Notes: a model not told the origin generated them from the sequence alone. A DNA stretch of 64,000 nt from Syncephalis fuscata S228 (GCA_025786725.1 JAHLTZ010000001.1:248001-312000); one strand, 5' to 3'; counted from the stretch's first letter, positions 655-64,000 are shown. Translations and numbers: made by a program.

Positions 655-694
655 ATTAATGGATTATTCATTATAAATAAGAAGCTACTTCACC

Positions 695-1282
695 TTGACT
701 CCCGCATTTTCTTAATACTTCAATACAATTAAACACTCATCCATCACTATAACATGTATAATATTACATCCAACATTAATTAATTTATGTATAATTAGCG
801 GTATAATAATGTAATTCATTAGTTATCTTTATTATGGTTTTGGTATATATACATTGTCATTTATTTAGTCAGATTGACTATAAGGAAGTGGCTGTTTAAT
901 AAATGACTTTTATAATAATTATATTAATATTGATCTTACATTACAAATATGCCCAGAATGCAATAGTAGAATATTAAAAGATAGAAGATATCATTTAGAT
1001 GCAAGAATCCACATTGTACGTAGATGCAATAACAACAAATGCAAAACGATATGGAATCGTGATCATATAATTTCTATTAATATTCAATTAATCTTTCTAT
1101 ATATGTCCAACAACAACAATGAACGGCCTCGAATGTTCCAAATAAATTAAATAGTATATTACATTGTTTATTTAAATCAATCCATTAATAGCATTTCAAT
1201 AAAAAGTAGTATAATTATGATGTGTATAGCAGCATGACTTTGATTGAAACGAATTGTGCTTTGGGACAGATGTGGGAGTCAA
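695..1282 (+). mobile_element. Fanzor relic 1: C-terminal zinc finger/RuvC-III fragment (935-1150) inside a putative TIR-bounded non-autonomous element
   Basis: 935-1150 translates LTLQICPECNSR..IHIVRRCNNNKCKTIWNRDHIISINIQLIF..ERPRMF*, the CxxC..CxxxxC-WNRD-NI-RP pattern of Fanzor1/TnpB. The ends ttgactcccgcat (695-707) and atgtgggagtcaa (1270-1282) form a 12/13 inverted repeat. Confidence 0.8.
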
Positions 1283-1401
1283 CCAATAGTAACAATACAA
1301 ATTGAATAATAGCAACAATAGCAAGATAATATAAATTATACATTGGTGGTAATAATAGATGCCTACCTTTTAATTATTGCGTTATTGATAGAAATATTAC
1401 T

Positions 1402-2040: not shown

Positions 2041-2780
2041 TATAAATAAAAAACTTTAGATCAAGAAAAAAGTAAAAAAGTAAAAAATGAATTTTAAATC
2101 GATCCTTATTTATTATTTACGCCCATTAGTGATCATTATTATTACCGTGTTATATTGTAAATTTTTATATAGTTTCATCAAATTAATTGTGGTCTATTGT
2201 ACTTTGAGTCCCTATCCTTAAACTGAAGGATAAAAAGATCCATGGCTCAAACAATAAATCGTCGATTAGTTTTTATGCTGAAAAGTGGTTTGTTGAAGCG
2301 ACGCTATGTCAATTCCGTTTGAATCAATCAGTGTCAATTAATCAGCACTATTTTCAATATCGAAATAAATAAATAGTATTTGATGCTACTTACAATAAAA
2401 TATAATGCATAGATAAATGTTGATCCATATTATTATTGCTGTAAAGTATTGAAAACATTGTAATTTAGTGATTTAATATAACTCACCATCCAGTTTCATG
2501 TTTAGTAGAACAACAAACGTGTAGTTTAATCATGTAAAGGATGTTAGCTTTGATTTTTTGACGCTGAATTACACGAGTCTATTTATTAATTAATATATAA
2601 AAGGTATTATACGTTGACTCTCACATTTTTTATTTACTCATTTTACTCTTATTTTTCTATTGCTATCTTATTGCTCTATTCAGTAATATATTATCCAATA
2701 ATACCAAATATATCAATATAAATAATATGCGTATTTGAACATCAATAAAAAGCACTATTCAATCCCTAGTCTTTATTTCT

Positions 2781-3455
2781 TTATTTTACATCAACACCTG
2801 TTCAAGTAACCTCAACGGCATGCCGCATCTTCTGGTTACACCTGTTGCCACAAGATCTTCCTGATGAAGACACTCAGCTTAGCATTATTGCATACAATGA
2901 AGGCCATTTGCTTTATCAATGATCGGCAAATAATCTGCGCCTACCAAGTTGATACTAAGAATATTCAAAAAATGGTGAACATCAAAAATGCTAGTCGTCC
3001 TACCTTTTTGGCACCATAAACGAGTATCTCACATTGCAAATATGCCCAAATGCAACAGTAGAAGATTGGAAAATAGAAGAAATCATGCAGATATAATAAC
3101 CCATACTGTACGTAGTAACAACAACAACAATTGTGGAACAATATGGAGTCATAATCATATGGCTTTTATTAATATTCAATCAGTCTTTCTACACATGATC
3201 AACAGCAACAATGGTCAACTCTAAATGTCCCAAAGAAATCAAATAGTATGTTACATTGTTTATTTGAATGTTTAAAATAGCAGCTACTAATACAATGTTT
3301 TGTTATATTCAATCAATTCTATTTATGGAAATAATAATGCTATTACATTAATATTTATTGTGAATGGTAATTTAAACACAATTCAACTATTTGAATCATT
3401 ACAATTAATCGCATAAAATGATTTATTGCCCTAGGGAAGTCAAAGTAATGTCAAT
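2781..3455 (+). pseudogene. Fanzor relic 2 (RuvC-II region to C-terminus plus conserved 3' non-coding tail), frameshifted
   Basis: Across frameshifts it reads SIIAYNEG..SMIGK*SAPTKLI..TINEYLTLQICPxCNSRR..HTVR..CGTIWSHNHMAFINIQSVF. Homologous at DNA level to 935-1180 and 63520-64000. Confidence 0.82.
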
Positions 3456-3568
3456 CAGCTAGTTTGCTCATCATTATAATATAAACAATCGGCTTATAAC
3501 AATAAAGTTTATTAATGATTTAAAAGTGCACGGCAATACTATCGTTATGATTATAGTCATTGCAATTC

Positions 3569-10033: not shown

Positions 10034-11158
10034 GATTGTTATTTTTTTTGTTATTATGACTCAATTATATGCCAAATATAAACAAGTAGTTGAATTGAAT
10101 TAAAATAATATGTTTGTAATGCGTGCGTGTGTGATATGTGCCTCTGCCGCTTTGATATTAACAATTGACAATGTGTGCTATGAAATGCGAGCGCTAATTG
10201 AAATACGATTAAATGATGAATGTGAATGAATGAATGAAGGGATGTTGGATGCTTTGAATGCTGATGTGGATGATGATGAATAAAACCTGGAATTGACTGT
10301 ATCATTGCCGTTTACTTATACTCGTTTATCGGCAGTTATCTGGTCTATATTGTGTTAATGCAACAAAGATGTCGTTGGTAACTAAGTCTTGTGTCAATGC
10401 AAATTAAAAAAGTGCAAATAATGTGCACAGCCAACAACTATACAGAAATGATTAAATCTCCGACTCATTAATGAACGATAATAATAAATTCAACACATTA
10501 CTCGATAATAATTTATGGTAGCCAATTAATGATGTTTTGTCAATAAAGACAAGACTAATGATAGTGTAAAATTAATATAATAAATCCAATCCAATCTAAT
10601 TAATTGCTTATGATTATGATAATAATCATTGATATGATACACTTTGGTAATTATTTTCATTAGATACAGATTGGCTTGGAATATTTTTATTGTGTATGGA
10701 GAGGCATGTGATATAAGATCAAGGCATGGCGCAAGATAATACCCACTGAACGGGTAAAAGTCTTTTTTTTGCCCTAACCAATACAGTGGGTACGCTATGA
10801 TCCTACTAGATTCTCGGTTATAATGGTGCTAATGTATTATGACGGCTGTCATGTTACCATGAGATATTGAACGTTGTGAATTGCAAAACCTTATTACCGT
10901 TTGTATTTATCGTGGTTGTCAAACGATGACGACGGTCATTTATTCGTACATTTGTATCTGTTACCGTTTAAATTAAATATATTAATTAACATTTCTATTG
11001 TATGCTATCTTTATACACAAAATACACATCACATACCATCTTTATTTTAAAATAATTTTTAAAAGATTAATTTAGTATTTAATGATTATAGTTACAAGCA
11101 TATTATTTTTATATGATTATAATTACAAGCATTAACCACTAAATCAATAATTATTTTT

Positions 11159-11858
11159 ATTTTATTCGTTTAGGTCTTGATGATACTAAAGTATCAGCTT
11201 CTTTTGATGTCATAACCGCTATCTCTTCTTTAATTTGGGGTGATGCAGGCCTTTTAGATTTGGTGGTTATTACCACAGTTGACGCCTTTGCAAGTTTGAT
11301 TTGTTTAACACTATGCGGCTGTTGCAGTGCAAGTACAACAGCACTAGTACGACCGCCTGCTATTACAATCAAATAAGCTTTGTACATATAAACATTACCA
11401 AGTACCTACCGTTTCAAATGTAATTGGATGGCCCTCAGTGGTCACTGGTCCGCGGTGACCGTTATTACTTGCCTCGTCGTCTGTATCTTGTTGTTTATTA
11501 CCTAGTATTTTATATTAGCAATGCAATAATGTATAGTATTTATTATAATAGTATATCAGCTCATTAATACTTACGTTTTTCACGTCCTTTTCCCCAACGT
11601 CTATGGAAAAGCCAATCAGCAGGAAATTGTTTAGAGTCTGCATTGACGGCACAGGCTTGTTTGCATATCGCATGCACTTGTTCATGCAATTGATCAACTT
11701 CCTTGTTAGTTAGTAATTAGCCGGCCGTCCTGGATGGATTCTACTTTGGTATAGCACCTCTAGTAGCTGAGTGTTATCCAAGTGTTATACCATTAAGAAT
11801 AATAATTACCATCAGCAATCCAATTGCCTACACCTGCTGAAAAATGTTGGTCAAGTAA
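11159..11858 (-). pseudogene. Stranded duplicate of the 3' ~700 bp (exons and introns) of the Fpg/MutM gene
   Basis: Near-identical to 17708-18409 apart from two 1-bp deletions seen; ends RPKRIK* (stop at 11157). Confidence 0.92.
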
Positions 11859-12505
11859 TAGTTTGTGCACACAATTGTAATAGATTTATACTTGTTAAAA
11901 TGATACATTTTATTTATTTATATAGCTAGTAATTCATTGATTTTGTCTTTCTGAATATATTGATGTGTCAAATTTACATATGTTAACTTAGAAGCTCTAT
12001 GTAATAGTAATTTTTAGATAGAAATCCATTTAAAATACTTTTTTTGACAATGCTGTCATTGTTTTACTGCTGTCATTGTTTTACTGCTGACATTGTTTTA
12101 TGAATACACTTGTCTTTATTGTTTGTTGTTTACTATTTTTATTACAATCATTGTTTCACTGATGACATTGTTCTACCATTATGATTATCTTTATTGTATG
12201 CTACTCGTCATTCTTATTACACTTACTGCTTTACTGATAAAATTGTTCTATAAATATACTTGCTTTTATGCTATTGATTTTTATTCTTTTATTTCGTTAC
12301 TTGGCAACTCTTTCATCTGTATTTTAATTTATTCATAGACTTTTATGTACAATGCCATTCGATTTATGGCTTTTATTAAAATATTGTATATACCATCCCA
12401 TTTATTAATGCTTTAATGTGCTTTGGATGTCAAATGACTAAATTTAAGCATATTTATACTTTTAAATTAAACTTTTTCAATTAAACATAAAACTAGTAAT
12501 AATTT

Positions 12506-13416
12506 ACATCAGAGTCCAAAATACTCATCATCATAGATTCATTATTAGTATGCATATATCCAGTATGCATATATCTTTTATTCATCTATATCATTCTCAT
12601 TATATCCTACACTACTATATATCATTCTATTCCATACTAAGCATATTCTATTTATTATATGCAGCAACACACCACTCATTCCACTCGTTGCATTATATGC
12701 CCTATAGCTTCAACATTGTTTTATGTACTTTCTTACCGTACACTTATCATTTTACATATCATTATATACTCTCATAGTCTTGCTCTACCCAAAACTGGTT
12801 TTATTTTTGTTCTAGCCTTATTATTAAGAAAGTTCGACTAATGTCGGTCATCTGCTCATGCATATATGCTCAATAACTTTAACATTGCTAATCTCGCTCA
12901 ATATTGCATATTCATTATAATGTTTATCATTTTATTGTGTACTGCCATTACGCTGTCTATAGCCGTTGTCGGTATGGCTCCAACTCTTTTATTAATAAAA
13001 TTGACATATCGCACTTAGTTTGGTCACTGAGTTATATTGATAGAACAGATAATATGGATATGAACGGAGTTATGTTTTATTAAAATTATTTATAAACAAA
13101 CTAGATCATGCCAGTTAGTTATGATTTTAATGTTGATCAAGCAAAGTGACGATATATATATAGCAATAACGCATACTGTGATGATATATGCATACTGGAC
13201 AGTAAATATACAATGATAAGTATTTGATGACTGATGTCACCCACCATCCACCATTATGTTCAATAGATTGGATGTTATTAAATATTAGTCATTTGTGCAC
13301 CAAAAAAGCAATAAATGTGATGATGTAATGATTAAATAAAACTCACCACTTGTCCCATGTTCAATAGATTGAGTGTGCAGTTCAATTGCGCGAATGTTAT
13401 TAAAAATAGTCATTTG
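12506..13416. repeat. ~910-bp direct repeat, copy 1
   Basis: Nearly identical to 16461-17369. Confidence 0.95.
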
Positions 13417-13839
13417 ACCCCCAAATCATAATATAATCTAATGATTTGATGATTTAATGAAAATGATTATTCAATAAAATAAACGTTTAGTTTGACTGGG
13501 CGAGTGCTGTCAAACAAGTCAATTAGTACCAATCATAATAATTGTTTATTTTTATTACATCAGCACTTGCACCCACACTATAAAAACAGTCTGCCATCGC
13601 ATAACACACGATTTACGTCACACCTTTCTCTTTCTCTTCCACCACACTTGACAGCATTCATCCACTAGCCACCTTCCCACTTGCACTTGTTTCCATAAGT
13701 TCAGTATATGCTTTGCTTGCTATATGTCATTGTTAGTCTATTAGTATAAGCATGCCTAGTCTTGGTACTACATACCGCCCTGCTGTATGGCGCCATACAG
13801 CAGTGCTAGCGGTATCGTTTTACCTTGTGGGCAGCTGCT

Positions 13840-14200
13840 AGTATGCTAACTATGGCAATATATGCTACCAAACATATACCGTTATCTTTCTCTTTCTCAT
13901 CCTCTTTCTCATCCTCTTTCTCTTCATCCTTTTTCACTAACCTTCCATTACTTACCGTACTAGCAACAGTGTATGCTGGATATATGCTACCAAACATACA
14001 CTGTTGTTATCTTTCTCCTCCTCCTCCTCCTCTTCCTCTTCCTCCTCCTCTTCTTCTCTAACCTTCCATTACTCACCGTACTAGCAACAGTGTATGCTGG
14101 ATATATGCTACCAAGCATATACTGTTCCTTTCTCACCCTTCCTCATCATTTCCTTATACCTTCCATTGCTCACCGTGCTAGCAATAGTGTGTTTAGCTAC
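13840..14200. repeat. Degenerate ~100-120-bp tandem repeat (ccttccattac(t/c)accgtactagcaacagtgtatgctggatatatgctacc) with pyrimidine-rich spacers
   Basis: Clear copies at ~13940 and ~14063, partial copies at ~13855 and ~14160. Confidence 0.8.
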
Positions 14201-14719
14201 GGTAGTAGCATATAGTAGCACTCTGTACTGGCCATACAGCAGTGCCATTATATGCACTGCCTGTAAACACCTGCTAGCACGATGTGCATTGGCAGCTCTT
14301 CTTCTCTTTCCCTTTTCACTTTTAACAAACCACTTACCGGTCCTTCTTTATGATACACTGATTATGCAATGGTAAGTAACTAACTTAAATCAGTCACTAA
14401 CTCTGCATATAATGCTTTAGATTTACAAGCCATCAAGTATCAAGTTCAAGAGCAATGGCGATTAGTGTGTTAGCGGCCGGCTACCAAGCAATATAACATT
14501 GATGTTATATTGATGACTTTAGATTTTGTTTACTAACTTACTAACCTGTATTGATAATTACAGATTTATATCATAAATAAAAATCACCAAATTGTTTTAG
14601 TGTGCTAGCGGCCGGCTACACAACATTGCAACATACTAACTTTATATGTATTGTTTTAGATTTAGGTACTTGGACACTAACACTAACACTTGTTGATTAT
14701 TATAGATTTTAGATAGCCG

Positions 14720-15740
14720 AACACCAACACCAGTACCAACACTAGCACCAACATTGGCATCAGCACCAGTACCAACATCAACGCCAACATCAACATCGGC
14801 ACCAACACAACACCAACACAACATCAACATCAACACCAACACCAACATCGGCACCGGCACCAACACCAACATCGGCACCGGCACCAACAACACCAGCACC
14901 AGCAACACCAACACCAATACCAGCACCAGCACCAGCACCAATACCAACACCACCAACACCAATACCAATACCAGCACCAGCAACATCAATACCACCATCG
15001 GCACCAACACCAACACCAACATCGGCACCGGCACCAACAACACCAGCACCAGCAACACCAACACCAATACCAGCACCAGCACCAGCACCAATACCAACAC
15101 CACCATCGGCACCAACATCAACACCAACACCGACACCAACACACCAACACCAGTACCAACAACACCAGCAACACCGACACCAATACCAGCACCAGCACCA
15201 CACCAATACCAACACCAGCAACATCAACACCACCAGCAACACCAACATCGGCACCGGCATCAACAATACCAGTACCAACAACACCAGCACCAGCACCAGC
15301 AACACCAACACCACACCAGCAACACCAACACCAGCAACACACACCAGCACCGACACCGCACCAGTACTAGCATCAACAACATCCAACACCGACACCAACA
15401 CCACCATCCACCAACACCAACGTCGACAACAGCACCAGTACTAGCACTAGCACCAACAACATCAACACCGACACCAACAACACCAACACCAACATCGACA
15501 ACAGCACCAGCACTAGCACTAGCACCAACAACATCAACACCAGCAACACCAACACCAACATCAGCAACACCGACATCAACATTGGCACCAGCACCAACAC
15601 CAACACCAGTACCAACAACACCAGCAACACCGACATCAACACCGACAACAGCACCAGTACTAGCACCAACAACATCGACAACAGCACCAGCACCAACACC
15701 AACACCAGTACCAAAAACACCAGCAACACCGGCACCAACA
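14720..15740. repeat. A/C-rich low-complexity hexamer-type minisatellite (acc/aac/agc units) with internal ~130-bp duplications
   Basis: Visible repeat; long ORFs in several frames on both strands follow from the composition. Confidence 0.9.
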
Positions 15741-16460
15741 CTAACATTATTATTGTTATTTAGATTTTAGATAGCCGGCCACGGACACCTAACGTAAGTA
15801 TTATTATTATTAATAGCCGGCCGCTAGCACACTAAAACCAAATATGCAATATCAATTCAAGACAATTGTCTACTAACGTACTAACATTGTATTTATTATT
15901 TTAGAATTATAGATAGCCGGCCGCTAACACACTAATCGCCATTTTAAATAAGTAAGTAATGTGATACAGCAGTTGTAGCAGTATCCATCATAATTTGTAT
16001 GTGGTGGTATACTGTCACCAATAAACGGTGGTTATACCATCACAACAATAGCAACAATAGCAACAATAGCAACAATAGCAACTTCACAAGTACTTGATGT
16101 GACATCATCAAGACTAATTGATACTATTGCTATCAATTAACAGCAAGATTAAAAAGAAATATTGGATCAATTAATAATATATTATTTATTGGTAATATCA
16201 AACAATAATAAGTTTGATATTACCAAACAATATCAGAGCAAAGCATTAAATAAAAGCACATAGCTACTAAATAAGTAGATGCAAAGGTTTATACTTGTGC
16301 ATCTCAATCAATAACAATATGATCAATATACTTTATTGCATTTAATAAAGTGAATTGTAATAATAAATATTATACAATTATTATATTTGCACATACTAAC
16401 TAATCATTTATTAATTAAATAATTTACTAATCATTATAATATGATTATGAATGATGAATG

Positions 16461-17369
16461 ACGTCAGGGTCCAAAATACTCATCATCATAGATTCATTAT
16501 TAGTATGCATATATCCAGTATGCATATATCTTCTATTCATCTATATCATTCTCATTATATCCTACACTACTATATATCATTCTATTCCATACTAAGCATA
16601 TTCTATTTATTATATGCAGCAACACACCACTCATTCCACTCGTTGCATTATATGCCCTATAGCTTCAACATTGTTTTATGTACTTTCTTACCGTACACTT
16701 ATCATTTTACATATCATTATATACTCTCATAGTCTTGCTCTATCCAATGCTTTTTATTTTTGTTCTAGCCTTATTATTAAGAAAGTTCGACTAATGTCGG
16801 TCATCTACTCATGCATATATGCTCAATAACTTTAACATTGTTAATCTCGCTCAATATTGCATATTCATTATAATGTTTATCATTTTATTGTGTACTGCCA
16901 TTACGCTGTCTATAGCCGTTGTCGGTATGGCTCCAACTCTTTTATTAATAAAATTGACATATCGCACTTAGTTTGGTCACTGAGTTATATTGATAGAACA
17001 GATAATATGGATATGAACGGAGTTATGTTTTATTAAAATTATTTATAAACAAACTAGATCATGCCAGTTAGTTATGATTTTAATGTTGATCAAGCAAAGT
17101 GACGATATATATATAGCAATAACGCATACTGTGATGATATATGCATACTGGACAGTAAATATACAATGATAAGTATTTGATGACTGATGTCACCCACCAT
17201 CCACCATTATGTTCAATAGATTGGATGTTATTAAATATTAGTCATTTGTGCACCAAAAAAGCAATAAATGTGATGATGTAATGATTAAATAAAACTCACC
17301 ACTTGTCCCATGTTCAATAGATTGAGTGTGCAGTTCAATTGCGCGAATGTTATTAAAAATAGTCATTTG
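16461..17369. repeat. ~910-bp direct repeat, copy 2
   Basis: Nearly identical to 12506-13416. Confidence 0.95.
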
Positions 17370-17633
17370 GCACCAAATTATATTAAACTATTAATAAGTT
17401 GTTTAATATTAGTGTAATGAGAATAATACAAATAAATTACTGATAGTATTGTTAAAATGAGCAATGTCAATGTAGCTGTATTAAATGTAACTAACTGTAA
17501 TATGTTTATTTATTTATTATTTAATAAACTAAATCAAATGTATGATAACATACTGTTACTATTTTACTTAGAGTAAAATAGTAAATATATTGCTAACGGT
17601 ATACTAATCTTGAATGACCTATAATAAAGCTTG

Positions 17634-19139
17634 TTAGTATTTTATAATACTTATATCAAGTACAACATCTATTATTCGTATGCACAAAGTACACACCATT
17701 CTTTTTGATTTTATTCGTTTAGGTCTTGATGATACTAAAGTATCAGCTTCTTTTGATGTCATAACCGCTATCTCTTCTTTAATTTGGGGTGATGCAGGCC
17801 TTTTAGATTTGGTGGTTATTACCACAGTTGACGCCTTTGCAAGTTTGATTTGTTTAACACTATGCGGCTGTTGCAGTGCAAGTACAACAGCACTAGTACG
17901 ACCGCCGTGCTATTACAATCAAATAAGCTTTGTACATATAAACATTACCAAGTACCTACCGTTTCAAATGTAATTGGATGGCCCTCAGTGGTCACTGGTC
18001 CGCGGTGACCGTTATTACTTGCCTCGTCGTCTGTATCTTGTTGTTTATTACCTAGTATTTTATATTAGCAATGCAATAATGTATAGTATTTATTATAATA
18101 GTATATCAGCTCATTAATACTTACGTTTTTCACGTCCTTTTCCCCAACGTCTATGGAAAAGCCAATCAGCAGGAAATTGTTTAGAGTCTGCATTGACGGC
18201 ACAGGCTTGTTTGCATATCGCATGCACTTGTTCATGCAATTGATCAACTTCCTTGTTAGTTAGTGAATTAGCCGGCCGTCCTGGATGGATTCTACTTTGG
18301 TATAGCACCTCTAGTAGCTGAGTGTTATCCAAGTGTTATACCATTAAGAATAATAATTACCATCAGCAATCCAATTGCCTACACCTGCTGAAAAATGTTG
18401 GTCAAGTAAAAGCGCTTTAATTGGTGTACGCCGTTTACTGACTGCTTCAGCAAATGTTGTTTTACTAGGCATAGATAGGATTGGATCAAATCCAAGCTCG
18501 GAGATTGGTGGTTCATTTAAAGGGCGATCAACTAAACGAATACGCCCAAGTCGACGTGGATCAGTAAATGCCCAAAGTATGTTATCTTCTATTGGTGCCG
18601 TTGTAGTTGCTGGTTTTTTATTACTCGTTTTACTATTTGGTGCCAGTTCCATAATCAATTTCCAATACCGTGGTGGCCATTCGCTTTTTTCTTTTACATT
18701 TTTACCGGATCGTCGATATTCAAATGGTGCTTCACTAGCAAACTATACAATAAAATTAATATTTTACTTAATTTAATACTCAGTATTATTAGTAAATCAA
18801 TATTATATTTATTACCTGAATGTTGCCTGTCATACCAAAATGACATACCAATGCTGGTGATTGCTCAAATTGTATAAAGAATAATTTCCCCCTTCGATCT
18901 ACACTTTTGACACGTTGGCCACCCAGTGCCTTAAAAAGTGTCGGTTCAGTGTTGCAAAACACAATAGGATCGTCAGACTAATAATTAGAATAAACGCAAG
19001 GCGCTTAGTGTTATCATTTTGTTGAACAATAGTATATTAATGATTATATACATACCACACGGACTGATATCACCTGTCGGTCTAGACACCGTTCCTCTAA
19101 TAGACGGCGTGCCCGTTCAACTTCTGGTAATTCTGGCAT
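17634..19139 (-). CDS. Formamidopyrimidine-DNA glycosylase (Fpg/MutM/Nei, plant/fungal zincless type), multi-exon
   Basis: MPELPEVERARR catalytic N-terminus; HFGMTG; FTDPRRLGRIRL; IKALLLDQHFSAGVGNWIADEVLYQSRIHP (H2TH); WLFHRRWGKG; GGRTSA. The C-terminus reads into the insertion end. Confidence 0.93.
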
Positions 19140-20645
19140 GATATTAGTTGTATAGTAATCACTTTACTGTAATAGTAAGATAAAATAACACACTGTTAAT
19201 TGATACATTTATGGACTAGTCTATATAGACACATACATATATATATATATAATATAAAAGTAATAACACGTTAACGCGTAAACTAAGCGTTGTCAATTAA
19301 CAAAGAAAACAAACTTTCAATTTTACTAAATAGCAACAAGTTAATCAAATGAACATGTGATCATAATTTGATTGGCCTGTTGAGTGGTGGACTGTGTGTG
19401 TTATGCGTATAGAATAATTACTATCAAGGCAACAGTGCTCAGCTGACTACCTTGTCCCCTTTTCTTCACTGTGTGTATACTGTGCCCATAACTATCGTCT
19501 CTATTCCTTCTCCGACTGGATTCTTCATTCTATTCGTGTCATTTTCTGCTATTGCTGCCTACTACTGCCACTGCCTCTACCACTAAAACAACGGCTACTA
19601 TAGTCTGTTCTAGTGACTGCGCCTTGGCCGTGTTTGTTCTTTGTGCCAACATAGTGACGGATCTACTTATTTCTCGTTTCTATACAGGTGTACCTGCATA
19701 GGTTCATTACCGCAACCAAACTATAGCTGTAGTCACGGTTGTGTAGGCGCGTACCTGATATTCCGTTACTGCCACACTATTCTTCACTTGCTCTTATTTC
19801 TATAAGCTATTGGCGTCGCTTGGTAGACATCAGGGATTAACAGCCGCAAGACTTACTGTGTAAGGAAGAGTGTTTGTATTTACGAGGTAATTGCCGCTAT
19901 TGATCTTCCGCTTCACTTGTACTGCTTTCTTCCGTCGCTATTATTACTTTTGTATTTGACGTCACCATTACTTACCTTCTTTGTTCCTTGTTCTTCTTTG
20001 CCTGTTTCACAGCACTTTTATAGTTGCCAATAATAGGACGAGTAAAGGCCAATAGCTCTATTGTAAGTATAGCGTATAGATAGAATAAATACGTTGATAT
20101 GTGTAGTGTGTGGATGTGTGTGTGTGTGTGTGTGTGTGTGGATAGATGATGGATTTGTATGATATGGATAGTGAGAATGAGTAGATTTGCGTATAGGTGT
20201 GTCACAGACATATTTGTCTCCCTGGTTCCCCTCTTACTTTCACTCACGCACTCACTTATTCTCGTTCTTTCTCCTTCGACTTTACTGCAATATCAACACT
20301 ACGTTTATTGCTACTTAGCACTCCTTTTTTATAAGTTAACTGGCTTGTCGGTGAAAGCAACGACAAAGACGATCTGTCGTGTTTGTCTGCTGTTATTTAC
20401 CTTTGCGTCACTTTTTCGTACATTTAGCCACTTCTTTGCCTATTACTTTCTGTTCATCTTTCTACTTGGCATTTGTTTGGTAAGAAGTGCAGTGTGGAGT
20501 CATTAAAGGTGTATATGTCTTTTTAATTGCCATCCTAACTATTCTGTTAATAATTGCTTGGCACTGGGACTACTGGCTAACGCTTTTATTCTGTTTAGTT
20601 GGTCGTGCATTAGTAGGCATTATTGAAATAGCTTAAAGTATCGTC

Positions 20646-44081: not shown

Positions 44082-45418
44082 TGGTTTCATGCAATTATCT
44101 GGTGCATTTTGAGTAATAAAGCTTTACTAGTAAACTAAAACAAACTGTTTGGACAGTCTATTAATTATATAGCGTACGTAACTTTTTATGATAGTGTGTC
44201 ATTAGATATCCGGGTTATAATGATGAAAATAGTTTAGATAAACAAATGCTTTTACTGTGTACTTTGTAATATATACTAGTTACATGATCATTATAAATAT
44301 AACTAGGACTAAGTATTATATTAATGATAATATAGCATTATAATAATATCCATATAAATGATGGCCTAAAAACAGCAATTGGCCATATTATCAATTTAAT
44401 AATAAATGCCTTGTTAAGGGTAGTCATGCAGAAAACCCATACACTCGCCTTAGTATACCTGTGGTGTTTAAAATGCTTGCCTTGGTTGTAATAGTGTTTT
44501 ATATGTCTAGCTTATGGCACGCAGCTCGTTTAACCAAGCCAACTTGTCAATTGTTTGTCAATGCAAATAGTTATTTGAAAAGTAAATGGTGATTGTTTTG
44601 GTCAAGATTCTTGACAAGATACTATTTTATTGCCATTAAAATCAGTATCAGGTTAGATAGAATTGTACAACTACACTTGTCTATTATTTAAATAGTTATA
44701 CTGAAAATGACCTACATAATGGCCAAGTCCAGTGTGTCGCTACCACCTAGTTTATAACCAGGCATTATACAACTATTCTGATTTATTTTGCCGAATAAAG
44801 CACAATTATGAAAACCATTGTTTTATCCGTGTTACAGGTAAAATTAAATGACAAGTCAAAACCAAGCCTTTCAGCATTATTAATTGTGCTGTTACATCAG
44901 TTTAAATGAAAAATCATGAATGATTGGTGTATTTTGACATATTCTCAGCTATTGTTGCACGGCTCATTTGATAACAATAGGCTGTTGATGCCTTATTTGC
45001 TCTAAATCTTATAAGCTGATTTCTATTGTCCATGTATAGCAAATTGGCAATTGGTTTCAGGTTGGTATGCAATTCATTTGTTATATGTAACAATGTGTGG
45101 GTAATAGCCCGAATCACCCTTATTTGATGAAACAATATTGTGTGCCTTACACATGAAAAGAAGGTAGATGTTTTAGTCATTATGTTCGTTAATACTTCTT
45201 ATTAAAAGACTGCTCCGTTTTTTAACTTGAATGAAAATCGTCGACTTTTTTACTTTGACATCGCCTTGTTTCATGATTGATGCTACGACATACTTGTTCG
45301 CATTGATGCTACGATAACTTATCAGCAATTATAAATACTGTTTTATGAATTATTCTAAATACCGCAACTATTCTTTATATTCCTCAAAAATACATTCTAT
45401 TTTTAACATCATATCATA

Positions 45419-46410
45419 ATGCAGACTCACACTCGCGAAATAGTAAAAGAGGTCTCGGATCTTTAGCTTTACTATTTTGGTCTTTTCAACTTGTACCACA
45501 AAGTAAGTATAAGCAGTAAAATTAATTATACGGCAGCTTATTGACCACTTAAAAAGTATGGAAGATGTATAAAGAGAGATCCTCCAAAGGTGTATCTAGC
45601 CTAATGATGCTGATCTGGATTGCTGGATGCGCATTTTACGCGTCCTACGCAGTTGCATTGGATCTTGCAGTGACGCTTATTATCGAACCGCAGGCGGTTT
45701 TACTTTTTGCACTCGTTTGTTATGCTCAGTGTATTTACTATGAAAAGCAAGTATATTAATGACTGTGACACTGATAACTAACAATACTATAGAAAACTAT
45801 CCAAGCTTACTACGGCTTCTATTATATTAATAATTGTTTTTATTTGTGTTGGTCTAGAAGTAGGAAGCATTTATGGTACAATTGTAAGTGGATCAATATT
45901 TTATAATTATTAATTAACATTATTATTATGTAATTAGGAAGCTGACCGTCAGGGATTAACTGGTGTTGTTGCATTCATGGGAATCTTGCCTGCTGTTTTG
46001 ATTGATATTGGCTTTTTGCCTCAGTATTGGGAAGTGTGGGGTAAGTCGCTACTGTATTGATACTACCATTGTCATACTAATGATTGAAATAGTGACTAAA
46101 AGTGCCAGTGGTATTAGTTACGGCTTTTTAGCAATGGATATAATCGGATCTGTATTCTCTATCCTTAGCCTTATTTTCCACGAACATATTGATCCTATTG
46201 CTGCCGCCATTTACATTTCGGTCCTTATACTAAACTCAGGATTACTGGCTATTAAGATTATATTTGCCTTACGCGATCGCACAAGACTGCGCCATAATTT
46301 GACTACTTGTAATACTGTGTGTGAAAAGGGATTGCCTATGGAATCAGTAATGACGGAATCCACAATCATAGTGCGTGATGATGAAAAGTGCGAAAACAAA
46401 ACCATTATAA
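45419..46410 (+). CDS. PQ-loop transporter, tandem copy A (apparent 1-bp indels)
   Basis: FWSFQLVPQ..MYKERSSKGVS..; GFLPQYWEVW; GISYGFLAMD. Confidence 0.8.
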
Positions 46411-46424
46411 TATTACTACTAGCT

Positions 46425-46740
46425 GCATTTTATTCATTAATTATTCAAAAATCTATTAAATTTTGTGTTGAATTTAAGCGAGAAATCTACATGTGAACGC
46501 TTTGTTATAATGTCAATATCCATAACATCTACATTTAGCAAAGTTAATGAAAGCAACCAGTAGATCGCTGATTGTTTTCTTTAACTCTTTTTGCTACTTA
46601 AACAATTTTAATTAGCAGCACTGTTTCTTGTGTGCGATCAATGGCGACTGTATAAAGCTGTATTTTAAATATCAATGTTTGTCTTGAATCAATACTGTAA
46701 CCGGTGCCAATGTCGACAATTGGCCGTTGTCTAAAGACTC
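46425..46740 (-). pseudogene. Degenerate fragment of the BNA6 3' end (further copies at ~49562-49880 and ~52648-52970)
   Basis: gcattttattcatt..attaaattttgtgttgaatttaagcgagaaatctacatgtgaa matches 55275-55350 of the intact gene; right boundary approximate. Confidence 0.75.
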
Positions 46741-48554
46741 TCTGATTATATCCCCTTCTAGTCTACATTTAAATATATGTTATTTTTTAATATTTACGTT
46801 TATATATTATTATTTTTATTAATTATTTTTTTATTTGTTGAAACATAAATAATATAATACAAGTAAATAATTAAGAAGTTATAGTAACACTGCCGATAAA
46901 ACACAATATGTATATGTATACTTGTATATTTTTTAAATATGTCATGTTGAAAGTTAAAAATGCTATAGCTAGATACAAAAAAATTATCAATAAACTTAGT
47001 TGCTAAAACATAGGATAGTATAGAGTAAAAGGGATGGGTTAAAGAAACTGCATGAATAGCAATGTTAAAGCTGTAGTGTATGCGGCTCAATGAATAAAAC
47101 AATTAAAGCTTGTAACAAACAAAATGTACCTAATGCATTATAAAATGACATATAATAGTATAAACATAATTATAGTAATATATGCTACTACAAATTGTTT
47201 AATTATTTCTATACTAAAAGTCGTAATTGCCTTGTAATCAATACATTTTTAAAAGTTGTGCTGACGGTGATGGTCAAATAACGGTGATATGCAGTTTCCA
47301 AATTGGCTTTAATTGCCATATTTTATTAAATGAACCATACTAAGGAGCAAAGAATAAAATATGGCTGATAGTTAGCATTAGGTTGCAGAGTGTGAACGCT
47401 AATGGTATGAGCTGGCGTCAGGTTGTATTTAAAAAGACGTTTTAAATTTAGTTTGTATTATTAATAAATGTTGGTAAAGGCGCATACAGAGCATTATAAT
47501 AATATCCATATAAATGATGGCCTAAAAATAGCAATTGGCCATATTATCAATTTGATAATGAGTGCCTTGCTAAGGGTAGTCATGCAGAAAGCCCATACAC
47601 TCGCCTTAGTATACCTGTGGTTGTTTGAAAATGTTTGTCTTGGCTGTAGTAGTGTTTTATAGTGTCTAGCTTATGGCACGCAGCTCGTTTAACCAAGCCA
47701 ACTTGTCAATTGTTTGTCAATGCAAATAGTTATTTGAAAAGTAGAATGGTGGTTGTTTTGGTCAAGATTCTTGACAAGATACTATTTTATTGCCATTAAA
47801 ATCAGTATCAGGTTAGATAGAATTGTACAAATACACTTGTCTATTATTTAAATAGCTATACTGAAAATGACCTACATAATGGCCAAGTCCAGTGTGTCGC
47901 TACCACCTAGTTTATAACCAGGCATTATACAACTATTCTGATTTATTTTGCCAAATAAAGCACAATTATGAAAACCATTGTTTTATCCGTGTTACAGGTA
48001 AAATTAAATGACAAGTCAAAACCAAGCCTTTCAGCATTATTAATTGTGCTGTTACATCAGTTTAAATGAAAAATCATGAATGATTGGTGTATTTTGACAT
48101 ATTCTCAGCTATTGTTGCACGGCTCATTTGATAACAATAGGCTGGTGATGCCTTATTTGCTCTAAATCTTATAAGCTGATTTCTATTGTCCATGTATAGC
48201 AAATTGGCAATTGGTTTCGGGGTTGGTATGCGATTCATTTGTTATACGCAACAATGTGTGGGTAATAGCCCGAATCACCCTTATTTGATGAAACAATATT
48301 GTGTGCCTCACACATGAAAAGGAAGGAAAATATTTTAACCATCACGTTCTTTAATGCATCTTATTAGGAAACTGCTCCGCTTTAACTTGAATGGAAACCA
48401 TTGACTTTTTTTGCTTTGACATTGTCTTTTTTTTTCACGATTGATGCTACGATAACTTATCAGCATTATAAATACTGTTTTATGAATTATTCTAAATATC
48501 GCAGCTATTCTTTATATTCCTCAAAAATACATTCTATTTTAACATCATATCATA

Positions 48555-49548
48555 ATGCAGACTCACACTCGCGAAATAGTAAAAGAGGTGCTCGGATCTT
48601 TATCTTTACTATTTTGGTCTTTTCAACTTGTACCACAAAGTAAGTATAAGCAGTAAAATTAATTATACGGCAGCTTATTGACCACTTAAAAAGTATGGAA
48701 GATGTATAAAGAGAGATCCTCCAAAGGTGTATCTGGCCTAATGATGCTGATCTGGATTGCTGGATGCGCATTTTACGCGTCCTACGCAGTTGCATTGGAT
48801 CTTGCAGTGACGCTTATTATTCAACCAGAGGTGTTTTTATTTTTTGCAATCATTTGTTATGCTCAGTGTATTTACTATGAAAAGCAAGTACTATTAATGA
48901 CTGTGACACTGATAACTAACAATGCTATAGAAAACTATCCAAGCTCACTGCGGTCGCTATTATGCTATTAGTTGCTAGTCTCTGTGTTGGTCTACAAGTA
49001 GGAAGCATTTATGGTACAATTGTAAGTGAATCAATTTTTTTAATTATTAATTAACAGTTATTATTATGTAATTAGGAAGCTGACCGTCAGGGATTAACTG
49101 GTGTTGTTGCATTCATGGGAATCTTGCCTGCTGTTTTGATTGATATTGGCTTTTTGCCTCAGTATTGGGAAGTGTGGGGTAAGTCGCTACTGTATTGATA
49201 CTACCATTGTCATACTAATGATTGAAATAGTGACTAAAAGTGCCAGTGGTATTAGTTATGGCTTTTTAGTAATGGATACGCTCGGATCTATATTCGCTAT
49301 TCTTAGCCTTATTTTCCACGAACATTTTGATTCTATCGCTGCCTCCACCTATATTTCGGTCCTTATACTGGATTTAGGATTACTGGCTATTAAGATTATA
49401 TTTGCCTTACGCGATCGCACAAGACTGCGCCATAATTTGACTACTTGTAATACTGTGTATGAAAAGGATTGCCTATGGAATCGTAATGACGGAATCCACA
49501 ATCATAGTGCGTGATGATGAAAAGTGCGAAAACAAGGACACATTATAA
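48555..49548 (+). CDS. PQ-loop transporter, tandem copy B
   Basis: Same exon structure as copy A; MQTHTREIVKEVLGSLSLLFWSFQLVPQ. Confidence 0.82.
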
Positions 49549-51636
49549 TATAACTACTAGCTGCATTTTATTCATTAATTATTCAAAAATCTATTAAATT
49601 TTGCGTTAAATTTAAGCGAGAAATCTACATGTGAACGCTTTGTGTCATAATGTCAATACCATAACATCTACATTTAGCAAAGTTAATGAAAGCAACCAGT
49701 AGATCGCTGATTGTTTTCTTTACTCTTTTTGCTACTTAAACAATTTTAATTAGCAGCACTGCTTTCTTGTGTGCGATCAATGGCACTGTATAAAGCTGAT
49801 TTTAAATATCAATTGTTTGTCTTGAATCAATACTGTAACCGGTGCCAATGTCGACAATTGGCCGTTGTCTAAAGACTCTCTGATTATATCCCCTTCTAGT
49901 CTACATTTAAATATATGTTATTTTTTAATATTTACGTTTATATATTATTATTTTTATTAATTATTTTTTTATTTGTTGAAACATAAGTAATATAATACAA
50001 GTAAATAATTAAAGAAGTTATAGTAACACTGCCGATAAAACACAATATGTATATGTATACTTGTATATTTTTTAAATATGTCATGTTGAAAGTTAAAAAT
50101 GATATAGCTAGATACAAAAAAATTTATCAGTAAACTTAGTTGCTAAAACATAGGATAGTATAGAGTAAAAGGGATGGGTTAAAGAAACTGCACGAATAGC
50201 AATGTTAAAGCTGTAGTGTATGCGGCTCAATGAATAAAACAATTAAAGCTTGTAACAAACAAAATGTACCTAATGCATTATAAAATGACATATAAGAGCA
50301 TAAACATAATTATAGTAATGTATGCTAATACAAATTATTTAATTATTCCTATACTAAAAGTCGTAATTGCCATGTAGTTAATACATTTTTAAAAGTTGTG
50401 CTGACGTTGATGGTCAAACAACGGTGATATGCAGTTTCCAAATTGGCTTTAATTGCTATATTTTATTAAATGAACCACACTAAGGAGCAAAAAATAAAAT
50501 ATGGCTGATAGTTAGCGTCAGGTTGCAGAGTGTGAGCGCTAATGGTATGAGCTGGCGTCAGGTTGTATTTAAACAGACATTTTAAAGTTAGTTTGTATTA
50601 TTAGTAAATGTTGGTAAAGGCGCATGCAGAGCATTATAATAATATCCATATAAATGATGGCCTAAAAATAGCAACTGGCCGCATTATCAATTTGATAATG
50701 AGTACCTTGCTAAGGATAGTCACGCAGAAAACCCATACACTCGCCTTAGTATACCTGTGGCTGTTTGAAAATGTTTGTCTTGGCTGTAGTAGTGTTTTAT
50801 AGTGTCTAGCTTATGGCACGCAGCTCGTTTAACCAAGCCAACTTGTCAATTGTTTGTCAATGCAAATAGTTATTTGAAAAGTAGAACTGGTGATTGTTTT
50901 GGTCAAGATTCTTGACAAGATACTATTTTATTGCCATTAAAATCAGTATCAGGTTAGATAGAATTGTACAACTACACTTGTCTATTATTTAAACAGTTAT
51001 ACTGAAAATGACCTACGTAATGGCCAAGTCCAGTGTGTCGCTACCACCTAGTTTATAACCAGGCATTATACAACTATTCTGATTTATTTTGCCAAATAAA
51101 GCACAATTATGAAAACCATTGTTTTATCCGTGTTACAGGTAAAATTAAATGACAAGTCAAAACCAAGCCTTTCAGCATTATCAATTGTGCTGTTACATCA
51201 GTTTAAATGAAAAATCATGAATGATTGGTGTATTTTCGACATATTCTCAGCTATTGTTACATGGCTCATTTGATAACAATAGGCTGTTGATGCCTTATTT
51301 GCTCTAAATCTTATAAGCTGATTTCTATTGTCCATGTATAGCGAAATTGGCAATTGGTTTCAAGGTTGGTATGCAATTTCATTTGTTATACGCAACAATG
51401 TGTGAGTAATAACTTGAATCACCCTTATTTGATGAAACAATTTTAACCATAATGTTCTTTGGTACATCTTAATTAGGAAACTGTTCTACTTTTTAACTTG
51501 AATGGTCGTTGACTTTTCCGATCGATGCTACGATAACTTATCAGCGATTATAAATACTGTTTTATGAATTATTCTAAATACCGCAACTATTCTTTATATT
51601 CCTCAAAAAGCTCCTTTATTCCTAACACATATCATA

Positions 51637-52633
51637 ATGCAGACTCACACTCGCGAAATATAAAAGAGGTGCTCGGATCTTTAGCTTTACTGTTTTGGTC
51701 TTTTCAACTTGTACCACAAAGTAAGTACAAGCAGTAAAATAATTATACGGCAGCTTATTGACCACTTAAAAAGTATGGAAGATGTATAAAGAGAGATCCT
51801 CCAAAGGGTATCTGGCCTAATGATGCTGATCTGGATTGCTGGATGCGCATTTTACGCGTCCTACGCAGTTGCATTGGATCTTGCAGTTACAATTATTATC
51901 GAACCAGAGGTGTTTATATTTTTTGCAATCATTTGTTATGCTCAGTGTATTTACTATGAAAAGCAAGTACTATTAATGACTGTGACACTGATAACTAACA
52001 ATGCTATAGAAAACTATCCAAGCTTACTGCGGTTGCTATTATGCTATTAGTTGCTAGTCTCTGTGTTGGTCTACAAGTAGGAAGCATTTATGGTACAATT
52101 GTAAGTGAATCAATTGTTTTGTAATTGCTAATTAACAATTATTATTATGATGTAATTAGGAAGCTGACCGTCAGGGATTAACTGGTGTTGTTGCATTCAT
52201 GGGAATCTTGCCTGCTGTTTTGATTGATATTGGCTTTTTGCCTCAGTATTGGGAAGTGTGGGGTAAGTCGCTACTGTATTGGTACTACCATTGTCATACT
52301 AATGATTGAAATAGTGACTAAAAGTGCCAGTGGTATTAGTTACGGCTTTTTAGTAATGGATACGCTCGGATCTATATTCGCTATTTTAGCCTTATTTTCC
52401 ACGAACATTTTGATTCTATCGCTGCCTCCACCTATATTTCGGTCCTTATACTGGATTTAGGATTACTGGCTATTAAGATTATATTTGCCTTACGCGATCG
52501 CACAAGACTGCGCCATAATTTGACTACTTGTAATACTGTGTGTGAAAAGGGATTACCTATGGAATCAGTAATGACGGAATCCACAATCATAGTGCGTGAT
52601 GATGAAAAGTGCGAAAACAAGGACACATTATAA
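51637..52633 (+). CDS. PQ-loop transporter, tandem copy C (several indels; pseudogene or assembly error)
   Basis: Same exon structure as copies A and B, with frameshifts. Confidence 0.72.
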
Positions 52634-54253
52634 TATCAACTACTAGCTGCATTTTATTCATTAATTATTCAAAAATCTATTAAATTTTGCGTTAAATTTA
52701 AGCGAGAAATCTACATGTGAACGCTTTGTGTCATAATGTCAATACCCATAACATCTACATTTAGCAAAGTTAATGAAAGCAACCAGTAGATCGCTGATTG
52801 TTTTCTTTACCTCTTTTTTGCTACTTAAACAATTTTAATTAGCAGCACTGTTTTCTTGTGTGCGATCAATGGCGACTGTATAAAGCTGTATTTTAAATAT
52901 CAATTGTTTGTCTTGAATCAATACTGTAACCGGTGCCAATGTCGACAATTGGCCGTTGTCTAAAGACTCTCTGATTATATCCCCTTCTAGTCTACATTTA
53001 AATATATGTTATTTTTTAATATTTACGTTTATATATTATTATTTTTATTGAATTATTTTTTTATTTTGTTGAAACATAAATAATATAATACAAGTAAACA
53101 ACTAAAGACATTATAGTTTGTGCGGTTTAACGAGTGGAATGCTTAAAATCAAAGTCTATAACCAATAAAATATATTTAACACATAAAATAGTATATAATA
53201 GTATATGACATTATTATATTTAATATTTACATAATATTTAATCCCTTTTATACTAAAGAATTGTAATCTTTATCTTGTAATTGATTGTATTTTAAAAGCT
53301 CTGATGGCGTTGATGATCGAAAGAGCGATGATATCCAATTTAATATACAATTGATATGAATTCACTTTTATGAATATATAACCAATAAATTAAATGCTTG
53401 GCTTGTTACGTCTATTATTTTATTGATTAAACTTGTAAATCGATATTTATTTAGTCAATAAAACTTTTGGAACAAAAAATTATTAGTTATACTGTTTAAT
53501 TTACTGTTTCCTTAATATTAGTAATTAAACACTAATTAAACTAAATTTAAACCTACCGATAAAGCCATTTTATTAAATACTGTATTCATAAGAAATAGGC
53601 AAATACAATAAAATTACACATAGAAAACAAGTTAATGCAATACTGGAGTAGTGAGAATATTTACCGTATAATTGTGCTGTTTGGCCAAATTGAAGTAGCT
53701 TCATAGCGAGTACATGCATGTTAGATTGTCGAAGCATATCTGTATGCATGTTGCCACGTTGGTATGGCAAAATGACAAAACGGTCATTCACGAGTTGATT
53801 GAGCAGCAGAGAAGTAAACTGCTTTTGCTGTTATGTTGTTATTTTATGAAATAAAATTAAATATAATAAAAACAATAAGTAATAACTAATGAATCATCTT
53901 TTTAATAGTTATTTTAAGCGTGTATTTGAAAGGTAAGTAAATAGCTTCTTATAATGATATGCACTGTTTTAAGCCAGACTGTGGTCGTGCATGCAGCTGG
54001 GTAAATAAACTGGTATTGTGGGTGTATAGCTACGTATGCATACTAAATCATCGTGTGGTCCTATTTATCATTCAAATTGCGTTCAGGTAGCATTGGTTGT
54101 ACAATATACAATATGTCGGTCTGCCATTATCGCATATTTAAATACTGTGCAATGCCCATACAAATCAAGTTAGTAATTTACTGTCATTGTCTACTTCTTA
54201 TTGTAAACTGCCACTTTTTGTCTATTTGTCTATTCGATTTAACAACTAATAAT

Positions 54254-63519: not shown

Positions 63520-64000
63520 TGGCTGGCATTACTTCAATCTCCTGGGGCAGTAAATCATTTTACGCAATCAATTGTAGTGATTTGATTTGATTAATTGGTG
63601 TTTAAATGATAATTCATAATAAACATTAATCAATGTAACAACATTATCATTTCCATAAAATAGAATTGATTGTAACAGAGCATTGTATTAGTGGTTGCTA
63701 TTTTAAACATTTAAATAAACAATGTAATATGCTATTTGATTTCATTGAACCACTTGAAACCGATCATTGTTGTTGTTGGCCATGTGTAGAAAGATTGATT
63801 GAATATTAATAAAAGCCATACTTGGTATCAACTTGATAGATACAATTTATTTGCTGACCATTAATGAAGCAAATGGCCTCTACCATATGCAATAATGATA
63901 GGCTGAGTGTCTTTATTAAAAGCTCTTGTGGCGACAGTTGTAACCAGAATATACGGCATGCCGTTGAGGTTACTTGAACAGGTGTTGATGTAAATAAGAG
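63520..64000 (-). pseudogene. Fanzor relic 3 (internal ~200-bp deletion; continues beyond the window edge)
   Basis: Reverse complement aligns with 2781-2960 and 3158-3455; reads TQPIIIAYGRG..ASLM.SK..MAFINIQSIFLHMANNNNDR. Confidence 0.82.

What the first reader, a model, noticed from the sequence alone, without database searches (positions are those of the whole stretch)
11159..18409. Insertion flanked by a 700-bp duplication of the host gene's 3' end, leaving the gene intact
Seen: 11159-11858 equals 17708-18409 (introns included), separated by a 5.8-kb TIR-bounded insert plus 16 extra nt. The left TIR starts exactly at the duplication breakpoint. Fpg keeps a full ORF but appears to swap RPKRIK* for RPKRIKSKRMVCTLCIR..KY*. 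Known: ordinary TSDs are roughly 2-20 bp. Inference: a non-standard mechanism, such as single-crossover integration of a circle carrying host DNA, alternative transposition or break repair with template switching, that inserts without destroying genes in a compact genome.
Basis: partly seen in the sequence, partly recalled or inferred. Interest (0 to 1): 0.8.

Follow-up and report, generated by a model that had tools for sequence, protein, structure and literature searches.

The report
Transposon remnant with 700-bp flank duplication
A decayed jumping-gene element sits between two 700-base copies of the end of a fungal DNA-repair gene, and a second member of the same family has a similar 459-base duplication; such oversized duplications are a rare but already described result of an element's two ends being joined to the chromosome in separate steps.

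Summary
The duplication is in the assembly: 11159-11858 and 17708-18409 differ by two 1-bp indels and no substitution, and occur nowhere else. Low-depth contigs of two public runs cross the insert|right-copy junction, extra 16 nt included; the left junction was not tested. The 5.85-kb insert is a non-coding mosaic of a high-copy repeat family. Its 'TIR' is a real but 75% inverted match, not the family terminus (GRAGYTAYTTTACTTTRA, 189 hits), which is missing at both ends. Another copy (contig C201) is flanked by a 459-bp duplication of a globin gene's 3' end with 10 substitutions and no indel, so the pattern is biological; it was seen in 2 of 37 copies. Unchecked scan notes describe similar 384-645-bp repeats elsewhere in this genome. 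Fpg keeps its frame but loses its stop (+24 residues). Most likely the two ends were joined separately, at least one by break repair. Precedents: duplications up to 443 bp at Fanzor-carrying Chlamydomonas CRe elements, one-ended retroviral integration, P-element hybrid insertion. A host-DNA circle cannot reach new genes. New variant of a known kind.

The parts
11159..11858 (-). Left copy (D1) of the duplicated Fpg 3' segment; promoterless fragment joined to the native stop (11157-11159) and 3' flank; lacks two single G bases, one of them frameshifting (error or decay)
17708..18409 (-). Right copy (D2), part of the full-length Fpg gene; frame intact; sequence matched by X2 contigs without differences
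17634..19139 (-). Fpg (formamidopyrimidine-DNA glycosylase) gene, coding span with introns, ending at a new stop inside the insert (+24 aa)
   Evidence: Pfam H2TH in two exons; orthologues with the same Vac8 neighbour end in a short basic tail
11859..17707 (.). Insert, 5849 bp, non-coding mosaic of a high-copy modular repeat family; no family terminus at either end
11859..12505 (+). Arm 'a'; starts 67-117 bp inside the family terminus; best full-length relative 71-74% identical
12506..13433 (+). Module R, first copy; 98.4% identical to the second (12 substitutions), about 85% to other loci
13434..16460 (+). Middle module with A/C-rich minisatellite (about 14720-15745) between two nested perfect inverted repeats (14454-14483/15914-15943; 14594-14618/15814-15838); 89-97% identical to other copies
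16461..17385 (+). Module R, second copy, in direct orientation (inverted in copies on C201 and C168)
17386..17659 (+). Arm 'b'; best relative 84% identical
17660..17707 (+).
   Evidence: read support

Best explanation
The structure is real and arose because the two ends of a decayed, non-autonomous TIR element were joined to the host in separate steps at sites 700 bp apart, at least one of them by host double-strand-break repair, so the host DNA between the two sites ended up on both sides. Slightly favoured route (about 0.35): the element already sat at the Fpg stop codon; a break at its 'a' end was resolved with the empty homologous chromosome, either by strand transfer of that end into the homologue 700 bp upstream (hybrid-element-insertion type) or by the broken flank copying 700 bp from the homologue and then end-joining to the trimmed element. 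Second route (about 0.27): an excised element was integrated anew with one or both ends joined by repair (giant target duplication). Shown: the geometry, the right junction in reads, trimmed ends, a second case. Inferred: the order of events, the homologue's role and the enzyme (a MULE-type transposase in trans is a guess from G-starting ends and MULE genes in the genome).
For: Second case on C201: 459-bp duplication abutting both element ends, 10 substitutions, 0 indels; the element is on both haplotype-like contigs there. Right junction in independent runs. 'a' end trimmed by 67-117 bp, with a 2-nt overlap with the family sequence; 'b' end replaced by a private tail with an 8-of-9 junction match, chance about 0.01. 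On C361 a true terminus starts exactly where a 536-bp repeated tract ends, so the 'a' end makes precise new joints (locus ambiguous). No near-identical donor for any arm, which suits a long-resident or cut-out element. The assembly holds 96-99% identical allele-like pairs, and one such pair differs by a flank rearrangement beside a family copy. Precedents.
Against: The left junction is untested in reads. The two missing bases in D1 look like long-read consensus errors. Neither end in the window is a true terminus, so no transposase-made joint is visible here. No empty or unduplicated allele is in the assembly. No short target duplication was recovered for the family, so its superfamily is unproven.
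Confidence: 0.62

Rival explanations
1. Assembly chimera at this locus: an empty haplotype and a haplotype with a plain insertion at the stop codon were stitched together, creating the left copy.
For: D1 differs from D2 only by 1-bp deletions, the error type seen between redundant contigs. No haplotig covers the locus. The X2 contig crosses 17708 without a visible branch to the left flank (depth about 5). Left junction untested.
Against: An overhang join would be expected to drop about 700 bp of the element start, but only 67-117 bp are missing. The same geometry on C201 has substitutions only. Allele-like pairs mostly differ by 1-4%, D1 and D2 by no substitution.
Confidence: 0.15
2. Single-crossover integration of a circle made of element plus 700 bp of host DNA.
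For: It yields exactly this geometry, and family copies do bracket host genes such as a prolyl oligopeptidase.
Against: The host segment exists only at this locus, so the circle must derive from here; it is then a variant of the resident route, not a means of entering new genes. The circle joint would have to be the same non-terminal, microhomology-type joint.
Confidence: 0.07
3. Unequal crossover between two independent family copies inserted 700 bp apart on the two homologues.
For: Classic route to duplication-element-duplication (own knowledge); the family is abundant.
Against: The two R modules are 98.4% alike, as within single copies elsewhere (97-98%), not about 85% as between copies. 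It needs an earlier insertion inside an Fpg exon, and should leave true termini.
Confidence: 0.05
4. Fanzor-guided homing with overshoot: an RNA-guided cut at the empty allele was repaired from the element-bearing allele and copied too much flank.
For: Many family copies end in the same terminal modules as the Fanzor-like relics of this window; the best precedent, CRe-1/2/3, also carries Fanzor1.
Against: Neither the window insert nor the C201 copy holds those modules, so neither can supply a guide for its own site. The relic peptide gave no Pfam support; the Fanzor label rests on motif resemblance and earlier notes.
Confidence: 0.04

Closest known systems
CRe-1/2/3, Fanzor1-carrying non-autonomous Helitron2 elements of Chlamydomonas (Bao and Jurka 2013, PMC3627910)
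   Same: Truncated copies flanked by variable target duplications, some 44, 50, 93, 242 and 443 bp long, sometimes with extra sequence beside the duplication; Fanzor-linked family.
   Different: Most CRe duplications are 7-19 bp and follow TTTT; one element end is intact. Here no short duplications were found, both ends are trimmed, ends are symmetric TIR-like, and no Helitron domain was detected (uncontrolled search).
One-ended (aberrant) retroviral integration (PMC5041404)
   Same: One end joined by host repair, often truncated or joined to extra sequence, with host duplications of hundreds to thousands of bp.
   Different: There one end is a clean integrase joint; in the window neither end is a terminus. 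DNA transposon remnant, not a provirus.
P-element hybrid element insertion and maize Ac reversed-ends transposition (PMC3744419 and its refs 25-27)
   Same: Resident element ends re-insert nearby on a sister or homologue and leave tandem direct duplications that end at the element.
   Different: Those endpoints coincide with true termini and keep an 8-bp target duplication on the reciprocal product; Ac needs two nearby elements. Neither feature could be shown here.
Non-autonomous Mutator-like (MULE/Pack-MULE) elements, including Fanzor-bearing ROr-4, PBl-3, MCi-4 of Mucorales (PMC3627910)
   Same: G-starting termini, long internally repetitive arms, bracketed host genes, MULE transposase genes in the same genome.
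   Different: The 9-bp target duplication was not recovered, and no intact transposase was tied to these ends.

Membership tests
   63 hits vs 40 control; two pairs unrelated to the family; other copies run past this point
MULE-like non-autonomous element | Conserved terminal inverted repeat starting with G | tested here: met
   For the family: 189 hits vs 1 control. Not present on the window copy
MULE-like non-autonomous element | 8-11-bp target duplication at paired ends | tested here: inconclusive
   None recovered in old, rearranged copies in hand
MULE-like non-autonomous element | MULE transposase within the same termini | tested here: inconclusive
   PF10551 hits exist; one broken hit lies about 1.3 kb from a 'b' arm on C312; the DNA could not be fetched
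Helitron2 / CRe-type | RepHel partner, asymmetric terminal repeats, insertion after TTTT | tested here: inconclusive
   No PF14214 hit, but the control never rang; T-runs precede the left copy here but not on C201
Helitron2 / CRe-type | One element end intact in nearly all copies | tested here: not met
   Both ends vary among copies; the window copy has neither terminus
Hybrid element insertion / reversed-ends transposition product | Duplication endpoint coincides with a true terminus | tested here: not met
   Window: 67-117 bp short of it. Met on C361, an ambiguous locus; C201 begins with an alternative recurring end
Hybrid element insertion / reversed-ends transposition product | Reciprocal deletion product or parental allele | not testable with these tools
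   Needs other isolates or phased reads
Fanzor (OMEGA) homing element | Guide-RNA scaffold at the element end next to the target flank | tested here: not met
   Relic-tail modules absent from the window insert and the C201 copy

The most novel reading that the evidence does not exclude
In this fungus, long (6-7 kb) cassettes of a Fanzor-related TIR family regularly integrate with 400-700-bp host duplications by a dedicated route, which leaves a complete gene copy and lets the cassette pop out cleanly by recombination between the two copies, releasing element-plus-host circles. My two tested cases, the ambiguous third and several unchecked notes of the scan do not exclude this.
Probability: 0.15. 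Interest if true: 0.7.

Novelty: new variant of a known kind. Interest (0 to 1): 0.38.

Why it matters
It adds a fungal, TIR-type case to a short list of elements with target duplications of hundreds of bases, and at 700 bp exceeds the 443 bp reported for CRe elements. If the unchecked cases hold, this would be a recurring source of partial gene duplications and altered protein ends (Fpg gains 24 residues) in a compact genome, and such insertions would be reversible. As a one-in-twenty repair accident it is a curiosity with known parallels.

Tried and rejected
TAGTTTGTGCA ends as a family: rejected. About 700 bp missing from the element start, the signature of an overhang join: not found. Homology between the left flank and the insert's right end: not significant (P 0.27). 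Tail as a generic copy of arm 'a': a profile of other copies did not hit it. Short target duplications: none found. One-flank searches for further duplications at seven other copies were negative (and pairs in 45); two flanks turned out to be further repeat modules. C361 was set aside as ambiguous because it lies in an older tandem paralogue array. No coding ORF shared by family copies, no Rfam match. Metagenome scans for the terminus and for the left junction found nothing, and the source genome may be excluded there. Preston et al. 1996 was not held, so P-element details rest on PMC3744419 and own knowledge.

Full report
Observation. The two segments 11159-11858 and 17708-18409 align with no substitution and two 1-bp indels, both a G missing from the left copy. 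The match runs on imperfectly to 11150-11861 and 17698-18412. The segment occurs only at these two places in the 29.4-Mb genome. The gene is Fpg on the minus strand (Pfam H2TH in two exons). Read exon by exon, the right copy keeps the frame and the left copy is frameshifted. The breakpoint falls in the stop codon, so the full gene reads 24 residues into the insert. Orthologues on soil-metagenome contigs with the same Vac8 neighbour end in a short basic tail of similar length, so the short end is the native one. Earlier scan notes name the organism Syncephalis fuscata; I did not test the name.

Read support. One laying was allowed, on 17200-20000. A 361-nt contig of run X2 lies on 17494-17850 without a difference, so the insert|right-copy junction and the 16 extra bases exist outside the assembly, though X2 may be the same strain. 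A contig of run X5, which looks bisulfite-converted, crosses the same point with only 14 bases on one side. X2 and X3 carry the right copy's bases at the indel sites they cover. The left junction (11858/9) was outside the stretch and is untested. Contig depth says nothing about copy number.

The insert. It is a non-coding mosaic of a high-copy family: arm a (11859-12505), module R, a middle part with a minisatellite between nested perfect inverted repeats, a second R, arm b (17386-17659) and a 48-bp tail. The two R modules are 98.4% alike; within other single copies they are 97-98% alike, often inverted, while between copies they are about 85%. No arm has a relative above 85% over its length, so no fresh donor is in the assembly (the searches score only the best 40 candidates).

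The start of arm a and the tail match in inverted orientation at 39 of 52 columns, beyond all 3000 shuffles. But other copies continue leftwards past 11859 for 67-117 bp to a conserved terminus, GRAGYTAYTTTACTTTRA, found 189 times against 1 control. The window insert has it at neither end. The tail is private to this locus. The left joint shares 2 bases with the family sequence and the right joint has an 8-of-9 match to the bases before the left copy (chance about 0.01). Both look like repair joints.

Other copies. Among 37 family segments with at least 500 bp of both flanks (some are allele-like pairs), two have an adjacent long direct repeat: this one, and a 4.6-kb copy on contig C201 with 459 bp. 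The C201 repeat is the 3' half and 3' UTR of a globin-like gene; its copies differ by 10 substitutions, all transitions, and no indel, which is not an assembly error pattern. The polarity is the same as here: arm b faces the intact gene. An allele-like contig also carries that element, and its copy of the segment scores closer to the distal copy than the proximal one does, a weak hint of exchange between homologues. On C361 a true terminus starts exactly at the end of a 536-bp tract repeated beyond the element, but the locus is an older paralogue array and an adjacent deletion explains it as well. Further one-flank searches were negative. So the pattern is seen in about 2 of 10 long copies and in no short copy for certain. 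No short target duplication was recovered. Unchecked notes of this scan describe 384-, 435-, 490-, 520- and 645-bp direct repeats around 7-12-kb blocks elsewhere in this genome; they are leads only, and I could not fetch them.

Mechanism. A direct duplication on both sides of an element results whenever its two ends are joined to the host at two different points, the upstream point by one end and the downstream point by the other (inference from geometry). I put 0.62 on such uncoupled joining with host repair. The lack of a donor, the eroded ends and the younger age of the flank duplication than of the R pair (0 substitutions in 700 bp against 12 in 928) slightly favour a resident element whose a end was re-joined to an empty homologue; new integration of an excised, trimmed element is nearly as likely. 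An assembly chimera keeps 0.15 because the left junction is untested and the left copy's indels resemble consensus errors; against it, only about 100 bp of the element start is missing and C201 is biological. A circle carrying host DNA could only come from this locus. Unequal crossover between two copies is disfavoured by the within-copy identity of the R modules. Fanzor homing lacks a guide scaffold in both cases, although many relatives end in the same modules as the Fanzor-like relics in this window.

Comparison with known systems. Bao and Jurka (PMC3627910) report that truncated copies of the Fanzor1-carrying CRe-1/2/3 elements have variable duplications, some 242 and 443 bp long, with occasional extra sequence. 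One-ended HIV integrations give duplications of hundreds to thousands of bases with truncated ends (PMC5041404). Alternative transposition gives tandem duplications ending at element termini (PMC3744419). The window works like these but fails membership of each on a tested feature: no intact end, no terminus at the endpoint, no guide scaffold. The family is MULE-like by its ends and by MULE genes in the genome, without proof.

Verdict. Real in large part, mis-described in its ends, not unique in the genome and not without precedent. Sparing the gene needs no special design. New variant of a known kind, interest 0.38; a 0.15 chance that it is a regular, dedicated insertion route, which would deserve 0.7.

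Noticed in passing
L079:1214-1672 and L002 (G000:C201 12213-12671 and 17323-17781): Second family copy flanked by a 459-bp duplication of a globin-like gene's 3' end.
   Followed up: yes
L018, L089, L090 (G000:C361 57-65 kb): Family copy whose true terminus abuts a 536-bp tract repeated at 98.5% beyond the element, inside an older paralogue array.
   Followed up: partly
L038:68-772; also C290, C309, C312, C257: Prolyl oligopeptidase gene beside 'b' arms in at least five places (81-87% alike); on C350 and C312 two inward-facing arms bracket about 4.3-4.5 kb. Possible cargo-carrying copies.
   Followed up: partly
window 14380-15940: The best-conserved part of the family: nested perfect inverted repeats around an A/C minisatellite, with several branch-point and acceptor-like motifs on the plus strand. 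Possibly a structured or spliced RNA; no Rfam match.
   Followed up: no
window 17200-17390 (run X1): Contigs of the presumed RNA run reach summed depth in the thousands on module R-like sequence, far above neighbouring genes; the family may be heavily transcribed, or this only reflects copy number.
   Followed up: no
L093 (G000:C223 578 kb) vs C11: Allele-like contig C11 shows the flank of a family copy partly inverted, duplicated and on the other side of the element.
   Followed up: no
L087 and L088 (G000:C157 384.7-390.0 kb): Copy with 99.7% identical inverted arms of at least 612 bp and no target duplication.
   Followed up: partly
C111, C168 (413-428 kb), C174, C50, C325: Middle-module copies cluster at about 6-kb spacing at contig ends and on small contigs: probable tandem arrays.
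   Followed up: partly
window 2193-2262; L084:1131-1203: Solo 70-bp hairpins made of two family termini.
   Followed up: no
window 681-1290, 2617-3457, 63524-63994: Three Fanzor-like relics that share terminal modules and termini with the insert's family.
   Followed up: partly
window 44334-53117: Three tandem copies of about 3.1 kb, 90-94% alike.
   Followed up: no
run X5: G-to-A and C-to-T changes dominate: a bisulfite library, useful for methylation of this family.
   Followed up: no
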